Positions 28,514-37,700 are shown, counted from the first letter of the stretch. The stretch: DNA of 64,000 bases from Vitrella brassicaformis CCMP3155 (GCA_001179505.1 CDMY01000887.1:1-64000), one strand, 5' to 3'. Translations and numbers: made by a program. Notes: generated by a model not told the origin, from the letters alone.

Positions 28514-31043
28514 CTAGGCGACGGCACTCACCCACTGCCACCCAGCAGACGGCTGAACACACACAGAGAGAGAGAGAGGGGAAGGTGGACGCACCGTTCA
28601 TGGTGTGTGTATGTCTTCCTTCTCTTCCCCTGACCTGCAGTGCGTAGATCTTCAAATCGGCGAGTGTGAAGTAGAGGCTGGAGGCCAGCCTGGCTGTGCC
28701 CTTGTTGTTGATGGTCCCGATGTACTTCTTGGCTGCCGGCAGCTCATCCTTCATCACCCACACATGGCAGCTGCGAAGGTCACCTGCCGGGCGGCAATTG
28801 CCGATCCCCAGCCACAGGCGGCCATTGGCGATGCACACCTTGCCGCGTGGCTTACCGCCGGAGCCCGTCACCGCCCCCTGTGTGCCCGCCACCGCCACAC
28901 GCTGCTCGTCCTGTGGCAGGTCGATCTTGGTGATGCCATCGCCCTCAAACGCGCCGCACACCGAAAACAGCGACACAGCACAGGGGATCGTCGCCACTGC
29001 AGTGGGGTCAGCTGGCAGGGTGAGTCCGCCCTCGATGTGGGCGGCGATGATGGGGCCACTGGGGTCTTTGAGGAGCAGCAGGAGGTTGGTGGCGTCGCCC
29101 ACATTCTTGAACATGGCCTCATGCTCCCAGCCGTCACGCTCACCCCTGACAGACACAGACACACCAGGGCAGCAAAGGAGCGAAGGATATCATCCACGAA
29201 TCACCAGCAGCCTTCCTGTCATCGGCGGCTTACTTGTAGAGTAGTTGTGGGGTCGCATCCACCATGCCCGTCGCGTCGACGAGTGCTCGCAGGCAGGTCA
29301 TCCTCAGACAGGATGGGGTCGGCCGGCACAGAACTCCACACCTGCTCAGAGAGAGAGGACAAAGATCTCATGATGTCCACAGCCGCTTGTGTGCCCTCTG
29401 GCTAATGCCTGGCTGACTGACCTGGAAGACCTCCACACTCTGAGCGGAGAAGTTGTAGGTCTTGACGCCACAGAGGCTCGCCTCCTTGCTGGTGATGGTC
29501 TTGCCCACAAATTTCCAGCTCCTTCTTCTCCACCCACTGACGGCAGTTGAGAAGGTCGTCAGTCGGGCCGTACTCGCCATCCCCCAACCACAGGCGGCCG
29601 CCAGCGATGCACACCTTGCCCCAGGGCTTACCCTCCTCGTCCGTCACCCCCCCCTGTGTGCCCGCCACCCACACGGCCTGCTGGTCCTGTGGCAGGTCGA
29701 TCTTGGTGATGCCCTCCTCGAACGCACCACATACCGAAAACAGCGACACGGGGCACCGGAAGCGCAGCTGAGATGCTGGGTCGGCTAGCAGGTGCAGTTT
29801 GGTGTCGGCGAAGGCTGCGATGGTGTTGGTGTCGTCGCACTTGATGACGAAGAGGAGGCCGCGGCGCCCCACCACACGCTGCGCCAGACTCGCATACGAC
29901 GAACCGTGCAGCGAACTCCTGACGCACACGGACACGACACACAGATGCATAGAGAATGGCGCGATGCCCTTCGTTTGTCTGTTCTCACTTGTAGAGGCAG
30001 GTTGTGTTGGGTTGTTTCTTGCCGATCATGATGAGGAGGGTCTGCATGACGTCGTTGGCGAGGATGTTGGGGTACATGGCCTCGAGGACGCCGTACATCT
30101 CACTCACACGCACCAGCTCATCCTGGTTGGCACACGTGGGCGGCGGGACGACGGCGCCTTCGGGGGAGAGGCGACACCGACGAGCGAAGTCGACGATCCT
30201 GAACAAACCAACAGACGAATAGATGCGCTCTGTTGCTGCCTGTGGTGGTTGTCTGGGCGCTCACAGGTCGACGTGGTGCGCAGACACATCGACAATGGGA
30301 GTGGCGCCATACCTGCACACGTGACACAGAGAAGAAGGACATCCAATGATTACAGCGTCCCGATTTCCCCGTTTGTGCTTGCCTGTCTTCTCACTTGGTG
30401 AATCGGTCGTTGAGTGTGTCGAAGTCGGCCAGCGTGGCATCGGTGGTCGCCACTGTGCGGCCGTCCACAGTCACAGTGAGCACCTCCGCCCCTCCCCTGC
30501 CGCCCCGAACGGCCAACGACTTGATGAAGACGCCCATCTTGTCAATGAAGCTGCGGAATGCCGGTTGGCTCTCGCTGTCCTCAGTCGGTTTGTCGATGGC
30601 GATGGGCGACTCGGCGAAGAATATGTCGTGGTAGAAGGGGATGGGCTGCACGGCGTCGAAGATCTTGATCTCGTCGACCCAGCCATGCTTCAAACGGTAG
30701 AGCTTCTCACACAACCTGACACACACACAACCAACACACACACAGATGGACATGCAGCCAGCAGTGAGTCAATGAGTGAGTGTCATTGACTGCATGCTCC
30801 CATAGTCCCTCACCAGAGGAAGTATAGAGGGTCTGCGTCGATGAACAGAATACCGTCGGCATCTTGGAGCATCCAGTCGTCGAACCGGTGCAGCAGCACC
30901 GCCACACACGTGCCACGCAGCCCCTCGCGCAGCAGCACGCCACTCGGGAAGGCCATGGTAAAGCCGCCCACGTTGATATTCATCACGCCGCCGCTCATGC
31001 TGCCTCCTGCGTCCTCGCTGCTCGTCGACGAGGACACTTGCAT
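28514..31043 (-). pseudogene. BTB/POZ + two tandem TLDc-like domains, with two frameshifts
   Basis: VMNINVGGF...FIDADPLYF (KCTD-type BTB). TLDc-like LYKSSLHGSSY...LLFVIK and LYKGERDGW...LLLLK. Frameshift at ~29512-29520 (KKEL to KFVGKTI) and a 4-bp duplication GCAG/GCAG at 29289-29296. Confidence 0.75.
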
Positions 31044-31165
31044 GCGGTCACAGAAATCGATGAATCACGGAACGCTTTCGCGTGCTGGTGGTGTTGCCCA
31101 TGCAGAGGGCACCACAGGCGGCAGATCTTACGGAGAAACGGAAGGTAAGGCGGATCGCAACAGAA

Positions 31166-31194
31166 AGCCTAGGGTGCTCCCTGAAACCGCTGCT
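31166..31194 (+). promoter_or_regulatory. Candidate promoter motif, copy 2 (AGCCTAGGGTGCTCCCTGAAACCGCTGCT)
   Basis: 27/29 identical to 5908-5936. Lies in the 218-bp spacer between the BTB gene (-) and the FBPase-like gene (+). Confidence 0.45.
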
Positions 31195-31261
31195 ACCGCA
31201 GAGGTGAACTTGGAAGGAGATCTCGGCTGCAGCTTGAGGCAGCTCTCTCAGTCCGGCAGCA

Positions 31262-32987
31262 ATGGTGATATTGATGGAAAGAGAGTCGTCCTACATCCCC
31301 GAGTTGGGCGAGTTCGTGATAGCCCATCAGAGCGACATCCCGCCGGGCTCTGTGAACGAGATCAACAAGATCCTGACGACCATCAAGCTGGCCTCCAAGG
31401 TGGTGTCGCTGGAGATCAGCCGCTATGCATCCTTCTCCATCTCCGAGATCGAGGCCATGACAGATCTCGAGCAACTCGCACAAAACAAATTCATCGAGGG
31501 ATTCAGGAACAGGTGCGTACACAGGCAGCCAGGGGCATGGCAGGGCAGGGCTGGATGATGACTGCTATCGGTTTGCTTCATCTCGCCTTCGGTGCTGTGC
31601 TTTCTGTGTGCAGAGAGACTGTGGCCGGTGTGGCGACGGCGGGCATGGACGGCTTTCTGGATTTTGGAGGCGAGGCACGCAACCGGCAGTTTGTCGTCAA
31701 CATCCACCCCCTGGATGGATCATCAGGTGACAATGCAGACACACAGACAGATACACAGGCACACATGCACGGGCCCATCTGTGTGTTGGGCGTGTGTTGG
31801 TGTGTGGACATACTTGGACTGCAGGCAGTGAGTTCAACAACGTGGAGACCAATGTGTCCGTCGGTACTGTGTTCGCCATCTACAGAAGGTCTGTGTGTGT
31901 GTGACAGACGGACAGCAATGTGCGCTGGGTAAAAACGACGGGTACGTCTGTTTGTTTGTCAGAGTGTCGCCCATCGGCGGGCCAGTCGAGTTGCGTGACT
32001 TCCTGCAGCCTGGCAAGAACATCATCGCTGCCGGGTGAGTGGAGTGATTCCGGGACGATGTGAGAATATACTTCTGTGCGCCGTCTTTCTGTCTGTCTGT
32101 CTGTTTGTCTGTGTGTGTGGATGGCTCCTTCTTAGGTATGTGTTGTTTGGTTCATCTGTGCTGCTAATGTACTCGAGTGGCAGCGGTCTGCATGGCTTTA
32201 CCCTGGACACTTCCCTGGGCTCCTTCCTGCTGTCCCACCCCGACCAGAAGATGCCCACCGACGGAAAGATCTACTCAATCGACGGCGGCAGGCGAGCCAA
32301 GTTCCCTCAAGGCATCAAGGACTACATCACCTACTGCCAAGTGAGCCAGGACACAAAGGCTGATTGCTCCAGCACCCAGCGACGGACATGGTCACGTGCT
32401 CATTCGCTGTCTGCCTGTCTGTGTGTGCGTGTAGGACAACATCTTTTCGCTGCGCTACATCGGTTCGCTGATAGCCGACATCCATCGGAACCTGTTGAAG
32501 GGCGGCATCTTTCTCTACCCACCGACATTCAAAGACCCAAAGCCATCGGTCTCAATGGTCTTCCAGGTGGGTCAATCAATGCACCCACTCACTGCCGGCC
32601 GTGTGCTTGCTGCGTCATGACGTGTGTGTATCTATCTATGTCGGTCAGTGTGCTGCCATCGCCTACATCACCGAGCAGGCCGGCGGCAAGGTCAGTGAGT
32701 GGAAGCCAACACAATTGCTGTGCGCGTGATGCATGTGTGTGTGCAATGAATGCAATGCAATGCAGGCGTCTGATGGGCACACGAGACTGCTGGACCTGCA
32801 GCCCAAGACGCTCCACGACAGAGTGGTGTTCATCTGTGGCTCTAAGGTATGTCGATAACTGACCAGGCGAGATGGATGCACCCATCCATTGGCATGGCAG
32901 TGTCTCTGTGTGCTGCTGTGTGTATTGACGTAGGCAATGGTCGAGAAGGCGGAGGCCTTCTTCCAACAGTCACCCAAGTTCGGGTGA
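31262..32987 (+). CDS. FBP: Class I fructose-1,6-bisphosphatase-like protein (E. coli Fbp-like), probably catalytically inactive
   Basis: Spliced product aligns colinearly with E. coli Fbp: [74 protein letters not shown]. Ends QSPKFG*. Confidence 0.9.
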
Positions 32988-33512
32988 CTAACAAGATGGA
33001 GACTGCGTCCATGAAGGGATTGCATACGAATGAAAGGACGGATTGGCTATTTCTCCCACTTCATGCCATTGGTGCATTTTTCTCCCTCTGGTGTGCACTG
33101 CCCTGTGCGTGAGATTACGTGAGATTCATGGATAAGTGATCGACCTTCAATGTATTCTTTGAGAGAGACCAGAAGCACGTGACTCATCAGTAGGTGAGGC
33201 TGCCGCATTTTGTCAGATTATGTTATTAGCGGAGGACCACTGAAACACTGTCTGGATGCGACCCATTGAGAAAGGAAAGCCTTGTGCCGGTGGAGCACAA
33301 CGAGAGCAAAGTAGAGCAAACGAGTAAACGCGTCGAGATTTGGAGACGGCTATTCAGTGACTTTTTCGCTTCTCTCCATCCCAAATGATCACAATGCTTG
33401 TCCCTCGACCACAGTGACTTTCTGCCCACAGCCCGCTCGTGTCGGCAGCTGACGGGCTTGCCAGAGACCATCAAAGGGTGACTGACAGACCCTCCCGCAT
33501 GAAGGCCAGCCG

Positions 33513-34450
33513 ATGAAGCTCACAGCAGGGCTGGTCCACCCGGCCATCGCAATGTCCGACCCAAACGGTGCGTCAAAAATTCTATGCTCAATGTTCGCTT
33601 CCTGGCACCCTTCTCTCGTTGCTGTGTTCCTGCAAACCATTTGTGCATCTCGGTTGCAGTGGCAGACGGGCCGCCAGCCATCTGCTTTCGTAGAGATGTG
33701 CGTCACCACCAGCGACAGCAGCAGCGAGCTGGACCTGCCCGGATGGCCTACAAACCGCCGCCTCCCCCCACCGCCGAGCCATCTGCACCGAAGCCACCCA
33801 CCCGGCTCCTGGCAGGCTATTACGAGTATTTCTCGTGGGCTTTCGACGCGCTTTTTGCGCCAGGTGGCTCCACACGGGGAAGAGACGCAATCGAGATGGA
33901 ACACACAGGACCGACGGGCGTTTTGAGTGTGGTGTTCCAAGACGAAAGGGCGGGTTGACACGTCGAGCGGATGGCCGCACCGCTCATCCCAAGGGCGTTA
34001 CAGGGTGGAGAGAGTGGCGTTGTCATCTCGGTCGGAGGAATGGGATCAGGCAATACATTCACCCAATTCGGTATGCGGAGATGACGGAATCGAAACGGAA
34101 CGATTCCGGGGACCGATGGGTGATTCTGTATTTGCTTTTGCAGAGACGGAAAGGCGGGTTGATGAGACCTTCGAGCGACTGGCCGCACCTTTTCTCTTTC
34201 GGGCGCTTCGGCGTGCAGAATGGGTTCAGGGAAGACGACTACACAGTCCGGTACGTGGATCCCTGTCAGGACCGATGCGTGTTTTATGGTTGCTGTTGCA
34301 GACAACCAAGCGCGGGGGGAGCATGTCTCCGAGCGAGTAGCGGCACCGCTTCTTCTACGGGCATTGCACTGCGCAGAGAGCAGTGCTGTCCTCTCTACTA
34401 CAGAGATCGCTGGCGAAAGCGTTTGAGCTAGTCCACGATTTGCTGCCGAA
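33513..34450 (+). pseudogene. Degenerate tandem duplicate of the 5' part of the kinesin-like gene, with a triplicated P-loop exon
   Basis: MKLTAG start matches 34770. Intron-1 acceptor mutated (CTGCAG to CTGCAA). TGA in the first P-loop exon copy. GGMGSGNTFTQFG and MGSGKTTTQSG variants. Confidence 0.8.
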
Positions 34451-34769: not shown

Positions 34770-37700
34770 ATGAAGCTGACAGGCTCAAGTGAGCCTATTG
34801 AGGCGCCCCTGCGCCTCACAGCATGCGCCATTCACCCCTGCAGCGTCCTGCCCGACACGAAAAGTGCGTCAAGGATTCTACACTCAATGTGCGCTTCCTG
34901 GCACCCCTTCTCTCCTGCCTGTGCTCCTGCAGACCACTTCAGCAACTCGTTTGCTGTGAGGGAGCAGCCGCCCGCCATCTGTTTCCGCGAAGATGTGCGG
35001 CACCACCACCCCCAGCAGCAGAAGAAAGGCCCCGCCCGGATGGCCTATCGCCCCCCTCCCCCCACCGGTCCGCCGCCTGCACCGAAGCCGCCCGGCCGAC
35101 TCCTAGAGGGGCACTACGAGTATTCGCCCTGGGCGTTCGAGACTCTCGTGCCCCCAGGTGGCTAAATGGCCACACACACAGGAGAGACGCGATCGAGGCG
35201 GATCACACAGGACCGATGGGTGTTTCTGTGCTTGCTGTTCCAGACACGGAAGCGCGGCATGACCGCATCTTCAACCAGATAGCGGAGCCGCTTGTCCGGG
35301 GGGCTGTCCTGCGAGGGGAGAGTGGTATTGTTCTGTCCACTGGAGGAACGGGAAGCGGAAAGACCTTCACCCAATTGGGTATATGGAGATGACACGCACT
35401 TGCCATCAGACCGGTCACGTCGCCACTGGTCTGTGTCTCCTCTCTTCTGCAGGGAACTCAAGGAAGGGACAAGGTGGCATTGTACACGAATCGCTGGCGA
35501 GAGCCTTTCAACTGGTTCACGAGTCGTCCACAGTGATCTCCATCTCCTTTGTGGAGATATACCGAAACCGCATCCACGACCTCCTCCTCGACACCAATAC
35601 GAACAATGTACACAAACACGCCGAGACAAGCAGACGGAAACGGGCTCAGCGCGCTTATGCACGTTTCTGCTTGGTGTATGTGCAGCGGGATGATCGCAGG
35701 CGACGAGGCGGGCAGGGCGCCACCGGGTCAGCGCCAGGCACCACGAGCAAGTTTCGGTGTAGCACTTTGTTGGAGGCCCTCAGTCTGTTTGGCGAGGGTT
35801 GTGAGAGAAGGTGCGCAAACTCAGAGAGCCGGAAAGCAGAGTCCTCACACATTAATGCGATGCCGATCGTCTGTGCTGTGGGTGTGGTGTGATCCAGGCA
35901 CTCTGCCCATCTTCTGAGCAATCCAACTGCCTCTCGCGGTCACACCATCTTCATCGTGGGCTGAGTTCGACCCTGTCCGCCAGATCCATGTCTCTATTGC
36001 TGCATTTGTCTGTGTGTATGCAGATCGAATTCTCGGATCATGATAGCGGCCGATCGAGCGTGGTGTCGTTCGTGGACATGGCGACGGCTGTCGTACCAGA
36101 GCGGGTGGAGCCCACTGGCACAGGGCGCTATAAGGTATACGCGAAGGACGTGTCAAAGACGATTGAGGAGTCTCGTGAGACACTGAGGTCAGCAGATGAG
36201 CCCACCATATGTCTCGCCTCCTTTCTGGTCATGTGTGTCCGCTTCCTTGGCTGTGTCGCTGTCAGTCTGTGTGTGCGGAAGTTCAATGATGACAAGCAGC
36301 AGCGACTGCGGGAGGAACTCGAGGGTGCCGACGAGGAAGAGGCTGACCACGAGACGCACCAGGAGCGGAAGAAGCCGTTTGTGCCCAAGAGCCGGCCCAA
36401 CTCACGTCATATCATCCTTCAGCCCAGCCCGTTGCCGCGAGATTGGCGATCAAAGGTGGTGAGGAGAGCCCAGCCCGCCCCGCAGATGGTGAGGGCATGG
36501 GACGTGCCATGGACGTTTGGTCAAGTGCTGGAGCCAGCCCTGCCTGAGACGGCACCGTGGGACAAGACGGCTCTCACGGCCTGCCTGCGGCAGATATTTG
36601 AGCAGCCTGAAACGTGAGACAGGGAAAGGCATCCACAAGACCATTCTTTTTTTTGTCTCACTTTTACTACGTCCGCTTTGGTCAGGCTGAACATCGCTTT
36701 GCTGTACCACATCAAGTATGTCAGTCCCGCGCTCTCTGAGTCCGAAAGCCTCAAGTATCTCCGTCTCTTCCACCGCCTGCAAAAGGCGCTCCACTTTCCA
36801 ACGATGCCATTTGTCGACCCCAGTGACCTGTTTCCTCCCCGCCCCACCCTCCCGCCGCCGCCGAAACCGTACGTCCCCAAGACTCGCTTCCGCAAGGGGG
36901 ATGACTGGGCTATAGCGGACATCGACTCGCCCAGGGGCCTAGCAGAGCAGAGGGTGAAGGAGTGGAATCGCAAGGAGAGAGAGCGGACAATGCAGACGAC
37001 CGGAGCCACATTCCGCCAGCGGGGGAGTTCGCCGAGTGGCACAAAGGATACCGCACGTCGGAGAGACGAGGCTCCCGATCGCCGCCAAGCTCGTCAGTCC
37101 ACCGAGGCTGCTGCAGCACCTGGCCACAGAGGGACGACAAATGGTCGTACAACTGGCGGCATAAGGGGAATGGGGGGAGACACCACGCAGCCAAATGCGT
37201 CGGGTGTCCTGCAGCAGGACTTCCAGGCGAAGACGGCCCCAAGGACAAGAGGCACTACCACGGTCCCCCCCGCGCCCAAACAAAACAGCCACTCGGTCAA
37301 CCCCTCCCCTGTGCCGAAGCAGGCGGAACTTATTCGACCACTGGACAAGAAAACGCCACCGTGCCCTCCAAAAGTGGCGCCAACACCAGCAGCGGCGACC
37401 GTGAGAATTGTCGGGCGCACCAGCAGCACATCGCCAAACCCGACATCTCGTCTCCGCTGCAGTCGTGTCGGCGTCCAGGGGCCTCAGACGGCCCCAAAGT
37501 GGGGTATCCCAGTGCTTACAAGCAAGGAGGACAAAGCCCACCAGAAGGCGCCCTTCCGGGGCGCCGAGAAGACATCGGCACAGCAGGGAGCCGGAGTAGC
37601 CAAGACGGCCTCAGCAAAATACGGCAGCGCGTTGCCGAGTCGGGCGGCACGTACGTCGGGAGCTGGGCCGGGCGAGTGGCAGATCCTGTGGCCAGAGAAA

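What the first reader, a model, noticed from the sequence alone, without database searches (positions are those of the whole stretch)
31262..32987. Intact FBPase homologue that has lost its catalytic metal ligands: a candidate pseudoenzyme
The ORF and all 8 exons are intact and colinear with E. coli Fbp, but the key residues are changed (pig numbering). SEE (E97/E98) is TAG, DPLD (D118) is HPLD, KLRLLYE (K274/R276/E280) is SVSMVFQ, SINEG (N212) is SIDGG, and the 52-72 dynamic loop is shortened. RYIGS and GGIFLYP, part of the sugar-phosphate pocket, are kept. This suggests a non-catalytic sugar-phosphate sensor, scaffold or regulatory subunit of FBPase tetramers.
Basis: partly seen in the sequence, partly recalled or inferred. 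Interest (0 to 1): 0.75.

Follow-up and report, generated by a model that had tools for sequence, protein, structure and literature searches.

The report
Conserved dead FBPase paralogue in Vitrella
This is an intact, expressed nine-exon gene of the alga Vitrella brassicaformis for a fructose-1,6-bisphosphatase look-alike that has lost almost all its catalytic metal ligands; it belongs to an old family of such "dead" copies shared with Toxoplasma-like parasites, so it is a real pseudoenzyme candidate but not a new kind.

Summary
The gene (31262-32987, + strand) has 9 exons, not 8, all with GT-AG introns, and encodes 337 aa. Intron-less contigs from three runs carry all eight splice joints with no mismatch. 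The protein is identical to Vitrella brassicaformis CEM36338.1, which a database has auto-named "fructose-bisphosphatase".

Alignment to E. coli and human FBPases confirms these changes:
- E97/E98 to A/G
- D118 to H
- N212 to D
- E213 to G
- K274/R276/E280 to S/S/Q
- the 52-72 loop is 8 residues shorter

R243, Y244, Y264 and D121 are kept. The AlphaFold model is confident (pLDDT 91) and matches E. coli Fbp (TM 0.86/0.93).

The losses are not private to this gene. A 100/100-supported clade of 13 alveolate proteins shares them, including Chromera, Alphamonas and the coccidian "FBPase I". A canonical-looking Vitrella paralogue (CEM40033.1) is sister to that clade, and both sit within Flavobacteriia FBPases. 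The window gene plus Alphamonas form a distinct "type A" subfamily.

A review of published Toxoplasma work reports minimal in vivo activity for TgFBP1, which could not replace TgFBP2. The bacterial origin and the duplications were published in 2014.

Verdict: a selection-maintained pseudoenzyme candidate and a new member of a partly known kind. The sensor or regulatory-subunit role is untested. The scan flagged two other dead-FBPase loci in this genome.

The parts
31203..31261 (+). 5' UTR (the transcript contigs start at 31203/31204)
   Evidence: L001 and L002 map from 31204/31203. An in-frame stop lies upstream of the ATG. There is no upstream exon, so no targeting presequence.
31262..31512 (+). 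Exon 1: start codon, helices H1-H3 and the shortened remnant of the 52-72 dynamic loop
   Evidence: joint 31512|31614. The alignment to E. coli Fbp shows 8 gap positions in the loop. D74 is E70.
31614..31726 (+). Exon 2: former metal-ligand motifs. T92-A93-G94 (31636-31644) replaces S-E-E; H115 (31705-31707) replaces D118; D118 (31714-31716) is the retained D121.
31825..31888 (+). Exon 3: begins with the type-A-specific 5-residue insertion G122-N126 (last base of exon 2 plus 31825-31838) after DGSS
   Evidence: Joint 31726|31825 is seen in 3 runs. The insertion is shared with Alphamonas P0352. pLDDT in this block is 61.
31963..32034 (+). Exon 4
32136..32340 (+). Exon 5: end of the N domain and start of the C domain. 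The motif YSIDGGR has D216 (32281-32283) in place of N212, G217 in place of E213 and R219 in place of Y/N215.
32435..32566 (+). Exon 6: RYIGS and GGIFLYP are kept. PSVSMVFQ (S273 at 32546-32548 to Q279 at 32564-32566) replaces GKLRLLYE.
32649..32690 (+). Exon 7
32766..32846 (+). Exon 8
32934..32987 (+). Exon 9: C-terminal helix (AMVEKAEAF...) and the TGA stop. It lacks the DGGWCF tail of type B.
   Evidence: Joint 32846|32934 is seen in X1, X2 and X7. See also the alignments.
32901..32933 (+). Alternative 3' acceptor inside intron 8. This minor isoform ends ...[10 protein letters not shown] and loses the last 17 residues.
   Evidence: P0270, L001 and L002.
32988..33427 (+). 3' UTR (at least to 33427)
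   Evidence: L001 maps to 33427. The X2 contig runs to the end of the laid stretch.

Best explanation
The locus is Vitrella brassicaformis gene CEM36338.1. It encodes a cytosolic, expressed class I FBPase-fold protein that almost certainly cannot hydrolyse fructose-1,6-bisphosphate by the canonical three-metal mechanism, yet has been kept by purifying selection.

Shown:
- A bacterial (Flavobacteriia-like) FBPase gene lies at the base of all these alveolate copies.
- One copy stayed canonical (Vitrella CEM40033.1).
- A sister copy lost E97, E98, D118, E280, K274, R276, E213, D74 and the catalytic loop on a single stem branch.
- That dead copy then duplicated. Type A comprises this gene plus Alphamonas edax, and has an insertion after DGSS, N212D and no tail. 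Type B comprises Chromera, the second Vitrella copy and the coccidian 'FBPase I', and carries a C-terminal DGGWCF tail.
- Within the dead clade the former metal-binding half is free to vary: 7-9 different residues at positions 97 and 98.
- The former sugar-phosphate half is fixed in a new state (S274, S276, Q280, G213, K/R215), alongside the retained R243, Y244 and Y264.

Inferred:
- The protein still folds and oligomerises like an FBPase.
- It uses the remodelled C-domain pocket to bind an anionic ligand, probably a phosphosugar, without turnover.
- It acts as a non-catalytic regulator or sensor at the F6P/FBP node, possibly by pairing with the canonical cytosolic paralogue.

Odds:
- About 0.7 that it is a selection-maintained protein without meaningful FBPase activity.
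- Given that it is such a protein, about 0.3 for the hetero-oligomer or regulatory-subunit version.
For: - Gene model and expression.
- Residue mapping. The roles of E97, D118, D121, E280 and D68 as metal ligands or catalytic loop residue are taken from PMC3785478 and PMC5639204.
- Fold: pLDDT 91.4 and pTM 0.91. Foldseek's best match is 2gq1 at E 2e-40, TM 0.86/0.93, rmsd 1.8 A.
- Shared losses in 12-13 proteins.
- Tree: dead clade 100/100; WIN+Alphamonas 99/96; type B 99/93; canonical Vitrella_C as sister 99/97; all inside Flavobacteriia at 100/99.
- Site-specific constraint: 81% against 26-35%, Fisher p 9e-12, and 12 of 16 clade synapomorphies shared.
- Type-A shared derived states, including the insertion and N212D.
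- Canonical paralogue P0388 with all motifs intact.
- Literature: TgFBP1 has minimal in vivo activity and does not rescue TgFBP2 loss (PMC7729029). T. gondii FBPase II, not I, is singled out as having 5 of 6 metal residues (PMC7164669). The bacterial origin and early duplication of the cytosolic FBPs of Chromera and apicomplexans is in PMC3971594.
Against: - No activity or binding measurement exists for this protein.
[quoted passage not shown] This implies some measurable activity for recombinant TgFBP1. I could not read the primary paper.
- That TgFBP1 is TGME49_205380 and a type-B member is inferred from the Hammondia and Besnoitia 'fructose-bisphospatase I' names, not from the T. gondii sequence itself.
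- In type A, N212 is D and K274 is S, so canonical 6-phosphate binding is doubtful.
- dN/dS could not be computed. The nearest orthologue is only 54% identical, and the runs show no polymorphism.
- Oligomerisation and hetero-oligomerisation are pure inference.
Confidence: 0.68

Rival explanations
1. It is still an enzyme: either a very weak FBPase or a phosphatase or other hydrolase with changed chemistry or substrate. It would use D121, the retained acidic residue at WIN D97 and the newly fixed Ser/Gln/Lys residues.
For: - The review summary gives kinetic parameters and AMP sensitivity for TgFBP1.
- The replacement residues S274, S276, Q280 and K215 are as conserved as catalytic residues usually are.
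- D121, G122 and the sugar-binding R243, Y244 and Y264 are retained.
Against: - Three of the four side-chain ligands of metal sites 1-3 are gone, and so is the D68-bearing loop.
- Positions 97, 98, 118 and 74 vary freely among clade members, which is not expected for a working metal site.
- TgFBP1 could not replace TgFBP2, whereas an active FBPase could.
- Low, AMP-sensitive, high-affinity activity in an E. coli-made preparation could come from co-purified host Fbp. This point is my speculation.
Confidence: 0.2
2. It is a duplicate on its way to becoming a pseudogene (neutral decay), with no function of its own.
For: - It has the longest branch among the chromerid copies: 0.42-0.71 substitutions per site.
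- It has extra degenerative-looking changes: N212D and the insertion in the active-site loop.
- A minor mis-spliced isoform has a premature stop.
Against: - The 337-codon ORF is intact across 9 exons with canonical splice sites, and spliced transcripts are seen in three runs.
- The 'degenerative' traits are shared with the Alphamonas orthologue, so they are old and have been kept.
- There is a strong excess of conservation at family-invariant columns.
- The fold prediction is confident.
Confidence: 0.04
3. It is an artefact of gene modelling or assembly: wrong exons create apparent residue losses.
For:
- The NCBI model of the sister paralogue CEM18557.1 does lack a segment.
Against: - Every junction is confirmed by intron-less contigs.
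- The model equals the deposited protein and the MMETSP transcript product.
- The changed motifs lie inside exons, not at junctions, except for the insertion, whose junction is RNA-supported.
Confidence: 0.01

Closest known systems
Coccidian 'fructose-bisphosphatase I' (Besnoitia P0152, Hammondia P0154; by name the orthologues of T. gondii TgFBP1/TGME49_205380) and the chromerid type-B copies (Chromera X2D8V6, Vitrella CEM18557.1)
   Same: - Same bacterial-derived class I FBPase fold.
- Same stem losses: E97, E98, D118, D74, E213, K274, R276 and E280.
- Same new motif PS[VI]SMxFQC and K/R at position 215.
- No targeting peptide, so cytosolic.
- 50-55% identity to the window protein.
   Different: - The window protein belongs to the sister subfamily (type A).
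- It has a 5-residue insertion after DGSS.
- N212 is D.
- It lacks the conserved C-terminal K-M-x-DGGWCF extension.
- It lacks K/R124 and Q125.
- No type-A copy was seen in parasites.
Alphamonas edax EP00386_P008111 (P0352)
   Same: It is the closest relative (54-56% identity) and sister at 99/96 support. It shares the insertion, N212D, H at position 118 and the absence of the DGGWCF tail.
   Different: It comes from a heterotrophic colpodellid and is known from the transcriptome only. It has P119A and a different, longer C-terminus.
Vitrella CEM40033.1 (P0388), the canonical cytosolic paralogue, and Flavobacteriia class 1 FBPases
   Same: Same origin and length, 48-51% identity, and a very similar N-terminal helix region.
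   Different: These keep SEE, DPLDGSS, the NxQGExxxKLD loop, NEGN and GKLRLLYE, and so are expected to be active.
E. coli Fbp (PDB 2gq1, 2owz, 2q8m, 2qvr)
   Same: It is the best solved-structure match by sequence (E 8e-81) and by fold (TM 0.86/0.93), and is colinear end to end.
   Different: E. coli Fbp is an active, AMP- and Glc6P-inhibited, PEP/citrate-activated enzyme with all metal ligands and the full dynamic loop.

Membership tests
Class I fructose-1,6-bisphosphatase (EC 3.1.3.11; Pfam PF00316 + PF18913) | Sequence homology over both domains | tested here: met
   The exon pieces hit PF00316 and PF18913. PF00316 and PF18913 are precomputed for P0270. phmmer against 2gq1 gives E 8e-81.
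Class I fructose-1,6-bisphosphatase (EC 3.1.3.11; Pfam PF00316 + PF18913) | FBPase/IMPase-type sugar-phosphatase fold | tested here: met
   AF2 gives pLDDT 91.4. Foldseek against 2gq1 gives TM 0.86/0.93 and rmsd 1.8 A.
Class I fructose-1,6-bisphosphatase (EC 3.1.3.11; Pfam PF00316 + PF18913) | Acidic metal ligands E97, D118, D121, E280, plus E98 | tested here: not met
   The corresponding residues are A93, H115, D118 (kept), Q279 and G94. Only one of the five is retained. Ligand roles come from PMC3785478.
Class I fructose-1,6-bisphosphatase (EC 3.1.3.11; Pfam PF00316 + PF18913) | Catalytic dynamic loop 52-72 with D68, and D74 | tested here: not met
   The loop is 8 residues shorter and the NxQGE motif is absent. 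D74 is E70 here and not conserved in the clade. The role of D68 comes from PMC5639204.
Class I fructose-1,6-bisphosphatase (EC 3.1.3.11; Pfam PF00316 + PF18913) | Substrate-contact residues N212, Y/N215, R243, Y244, Y264, K274, R276 | tested here: inconclusive
   R243, Y244 and Y264 are kept. N212 is D, 215 is R, K274 is S and R276 is S.
Class I fructose-1,6-bisphosphatase (EC 3.1.3.11; Pfam PF00316 + PF18913) | FBP 1-phosphatase activity | not testable with these tools
   There is only indirect evidence: the review's report of minimal in vivo activity for TgFBP1.
Alveolate (myzozoan) non-canonical 'FBPase I' clade | Monophyly with the Chromera, Vitrella-B and coccidian FBPase I proteins, to the exclusion of canonical copies | tested here: met
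   100/100 support, with the canonical Vitrella_C as sister.
Alveolate (myzozoan) non-canonical 'FBPase I' clade | Shared derived motif PS[VI]SMxFQC, G213, K/R215 and loss of E97, E98 and D118 | tested here: met
   Table. The window protein shares 12 of 16 clade synapomorphies.
Alveolate (myzozoan) non-canonical 'FBPase I' clade | C-terminal K-M-x-DGGWCF extension (type B proper, TgFBP1-like) | tested here: not met
   It is absent from the window protein and from Alphamonas. I therefore file the window protein as the sister subfamily, type A.
Pseudoenzyme (operational definition) | Homologue of an enzyme that lacks catalytic residues but is expressed and under constraint | tested here: met
Pseudoenzyme (operational definition) | Demonstrated lack of catalysis and a demonstrated non-catalytic function | not testable with these tools
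   This needs biochemistry and genetics.

The most novel reading that the evidence does not exclude
Myzozoan cytosols may hold a three-part FBPase system of bacterial origin: one catalytic subunit (type C, like CEM40033.1) and two anciently diverged dead paralogues (types A and B). The dead copies would keep a remodelled phosphosugar pocket. They would act as ligand-sensing partners or hetero-tetramer subunits that set the rate of the F6P/FBP cycle. Type A, the window gene, would be a previously unrecognised subfamily confined to free-living chrompodellids.
Probability: 0.2. Interest if true: 0.65.

Novelty: new member of a known kind. Interest (0 to 1): 0.42.

Why it matters
FBPase and its opposing kinase control the direction of central carbon flow. 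In Toxoplasma the active isoform is essential even on glucose, and its 'futile' cycle is thought to be regulatory.

Three results bear on that:
- The second, puzzling isoform belongs to a clade that lost its metal ligands before the lineages leading to chromerids and to coccidia separated, and has been conserved since.
- Free-living relatives carry a further dead subfamily.
- A canonical paralogue sits beside them as a natural partner.

Together these turn a vague 'low-activity isoenzyme' into a testable pseudoenzyme hypothesis. They also warn annotators that three 'fructose-bisphosphatase' entries in Vitrella are not equivalent: metabolic reconstructions that count them as gluconeogenic enzymes would over-count.

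Tried and rejected
- **Spliced protein as a query.** It has no single reference, so the exons were searched separately. Exon 2 alone found nothing in the PDB.
- **Composite alignment.** Aligning the exon pieces to P0004 was badly misaligned, and I abandoned it.
- **Representative-library search.** The search with exon 5 returned no self hit and mostly bacterial fragments. The protein id came instead from a stop-free 275-aa frame that contains exon 5, used with the region option, and from the cluster look-up.
- **Primary Toxoplasma paper.** PMID 26269956 is not held. Further searches for an explicit statement on TgFBP1 catalytic residues found only the review and the SBPase paper.
- **dN/dS.** I did not attempt it. 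The nearest orthologue is 54% identical, so synonymous sites are saturated, and all runs match the window with 0 differences.
- **AU tests.** Before Alphamonas was added, they were only borderline against a Vitrella- or chromerid-specific origin (p 0.046 and 0.035). Adding the Alphamonas orthologue settled the placement.
- **Names for fragment hits.** The look-up gave no alveolate FBP2 sequences.
- **Rfam.** Nothing was found in 30600-33600.
- **Neighbouring genes.** A TLDc-like gene on the minus strand and a kinesin on the plus strand give no functional hint.

Full report
**1. What is in the sequence**

Three-frame translation plus the GT-AG rule gives a nine-exon gene on the + strand:
- 31262-31512
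- 31614-31726
- 31825-31888
- 31963-32034
- 32136-32340
- 32435-32566
- 32649-32690
- 32766-32846
- 32934-32987

The introns are 74-101 nt. The CDS is 1014 nt and encodes 337 aa.

Contigs from three public runs in two studies (X1, X2, X7) lack all eight introns. They carry each joint at the predicted base with no mismatch, while the DNA run X3 is colinear with the window.

Two further transcript contigs from JGI samples (L001, L002) start at 31203/31204 and run to 33427. An in-frame stop precedes the ATG. The protein therefore has no presequence and is presumably cytosolic.

L001 and L002 use an alternative acceptor 33 nt upstream in intron 8. That isoform (P0270) ends prematurely. The main isoform's C-terminus, AMVEKAEAF, matches the family consensus.

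My translation is identical to P0314. This is CEM36338.1 / A0A0G4GZC5 of Vitrella brassicaformis CCMP3155, which UniRef auto-names "fructose-bisphosphatase".

**2. The residue changes are real**

- The exon pieces hit Pfam FBPase and FBPase_C.
- The full protein aligns end to end with E. coli Fbp: 2gq1, E 8e-81, residues 14-334 against 3-330. It also aligns with human FBP2, whose numbering equals pig numbering.

| Pig position | Window residue |
|---|---|
| S96-E97-E98 | T92-A93-G94 |
| D118 | H115 |
| D121 | D118 (kept) |
| N212 | D216 |
| E213 | G217 |
| 215 | R219 |
| R243, Y244, Y264 | kept |
| K274 | S273 |
| R276 | S275 |
| E280 | Q279 |
| D74 | E70 |

- The loop that carries D68 is 8 residues shorter.
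- A five-residue insertion (G122-N126) follows DGSS at the exon 2/3 junction. That junction is supported by RNA.
- Structural papers assign E97, D118, D121 and E280 as the side-chain ligands of metal sites 1-3 (PMC3785478). They call D68 of the dynamic loop catalytically critical, with three metals needed for hydrolysis (PMC5639204).
- Only one of those ligands survives here.
- The AMP site is also eroded: G28N, K112Q, Y113F.
- The AlphaFold2 model is confident: pLDDT 91.4, pTM 0.91. It dips only at the N-terminus, the loop remnant and the insertion. Its best structural match is E. coli Fbp, with TM 0.86/0.93 and rmsd 1.8 A.

**3. It is one of a family**

An exon-5 search of the representative library found the Chromera protein P0004. 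A search from P0004 then found these relatives:
- Besnoitia and Hammondia "fructose-bisphospatase I"
- Eimeria
- Cyclospora
- Cardiosporidium
- Digyalum
- Rhytidocystis
- a second Vitrella protein (CEM18557.1 / A0A7S1K6P6)

All of them share the same pattern:
- S274 in 12 of 12 proteins
- S276 in 11 of 12
- Q280 in 12 of 12
- G213 in 10 of 12
- K or R at position 215 in 12 of 12
- no acidic residue at position 98, and at most one protein with E at position 97
- H, A, N or T at position 118
- no D74
- a missing or variable loop

The former metal half is variable, with 7-9 different residues at positions 97 and 98. The former sugar-phosphate half is fixed in a new state next to the retained R243, Y244 and Y264. 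This pattern suggests selection on a remodelled pocket rather than on catalysis. That last step is my inference.

**4. Orthologue, active paralogue and history**

A search with the full protein added two proteins.
- P0352 from the colpodellid Alphamonas edax is 54-56% identical. It shares the window protein's private traits: the insertion after DGSS, N212D and the absence of the DGGWCF tail.
- P0388 is Vitrella CEM40033.1. It keeps SEE, DPLDGSS, the NVQGEAQQKLD loop, NEGN and GKLRLLYE.

An IQ-TREE analysis of 42 proteins under LG+C20+F+G4 gives this topology:
- The eukaryotic sequences sit inside Flavobacteriia FBPases (100/99).
- Vitrella_C (canonical) is sister (99/97) to a dead clade (100/100, stem length 0.35).
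- The dead clade splits into type A (window + Alphamonas, 99/96) and type B (11 proteins, 99/93).

So the catalytic residues were lost once, and the A/B duplication followed. This fits Petersen et al. 2014. They reported three cytosolic FBPs of bacterial origin in Chromera, attributed them to a trans-kingdom transfer into an early alveolate, and saw two apicomplexan subtrees that they put down to an early duplication (PMC3971594).

**5. Selection**

- The window protein matches the clade majority at 81% of the 108 columns that are invariant in the other eleven dead proteins. It matches at only 26-35% of the variable columns (Fisher p 9e-12).
- It carries 12 of the 16 clade-specific derived states.
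- Together with the intact ORF, the canonical splice sites, the expression and the old age of its "degenerative" traits, this argues against neutral decay.
- A codon-based test was not possible (see the tried-and-rejected field).

**6. Function**

- A review states that TgFBP1 and TgFBP2 are both cytosolic. [quoted passage not shown] - Olson et al. single out FBPase II (TGME49_247510), not FBPase I (TGME49_205380), as having five of six metal-binding residues (PMC7164669).
- The same review says the two isoenzymes differ in Vmax, Km and AMP sensitivity. Some in vitro activity may therefore have been measured for TgFBP1. I could not read the primary paper.
- The link from TgFBP1 to type B rests on the gene names of its Hammondia and Besnoitia relatives.
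- My best reading, at about 0.7, is a selection-maintained protein without meaningful FBPase activity. The most likely mode of action is ligand binding in the remodelled pocket and/or association with the canonical paralogue. Both remain untested.
- For type A, the conserved N212D and the insertion suggest that the ligand, if there is one, is not bound as F6P is bound in canonical enzymes.

**7. Novelty**

Already public:
- the gene, its protein and its bacterial ancestry
- the low activity of the Toxoplasma relative

Possibly new (I found no statement of these in the searchable literature):
- the whole FBPase I clade lacks the metal ligands as a shared ancestral state
- a distinct type-A subfamily exists in Vitrella and Alphamonas
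- a canonical paralogue sits beside both dead copies in Vitrella

The scan's own notes list two other dead-FBPase findings in this genome (s1-227012 and s1-239586). The first may be the type-B locus. I rate this a new member of a known kind, of moderate interest.

Noticed in passing
window 32901-32933: There is an alternative 3' acceptor in intron 8. Transcript contigs L001 and L002 (JGI samples 3300017148 and 3300017297) retain 33 nt, which gives a premature stop and a protein (P0270, 330 aa) without the C-terminal helix. Runs X1, X2 and X7 show the canonical joint.
   Followed up: yes
window 31167-31198: A 32-nt stretch just upstream of the transcript start has very high word depth in three runs (up to about 4800 in X3). 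There, contigs continue into unrelated sequence (loose end ACAGCTTAAACTGC...). It occurs once in the window and has no Rfam match. It may be a fragment of an abundant repeat or RNA.
   Followed up: partly
P0153 (CEM18557.1, Vitrella type-B paralogue; not in this window): The NCBI gene model (327 aa) lacks the segment YIYPPTF...PSVSMVFQ that is present in the MMETSP-derived product P0318 (345 aa). An exon was probably missed in the annotation.
   Followed up: partly
P0009 (328 aa, JGI/Logan, contig 18.7 kb; organism unknown): This is another FBPase homologue with partly dead motifs: SEE is IEI, DPLDGS is DSIDGV, K274 is N, R276 is Q and E280 is Q. It has a very long branch (1.4) and lies outside the alveolate dead clade, so it may be an independent pseudo-FBPase.
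   Followed up: no
P0001 and its cluster (692-766 aa, JGI/ENA): These long proteins have two FBPase-like stretches and a transit-peptide-like N-terminus. They look like tandem or fused FBPases in some alga-like organisms.
   Followed up: no
window 29405-29950 (-) and 34823-35389 (+): The flanking genes look like a TLDc-domain protein (weak, E 0.002) upstream on the minus strand and a kinesin motor (E 2e-5) downstream on the plus strand. There is no metabolic link to the FBPase-like gene.
   Followed up: partly
P0158 cluster (P0315 in Colinus virginianus, P0316 in Physeter catodon): Type-B dead FBPases are filed under a quail genome and a sperm whale genome. They are almost certainly coccidian contamination of those assemblies.
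   Followed up: no
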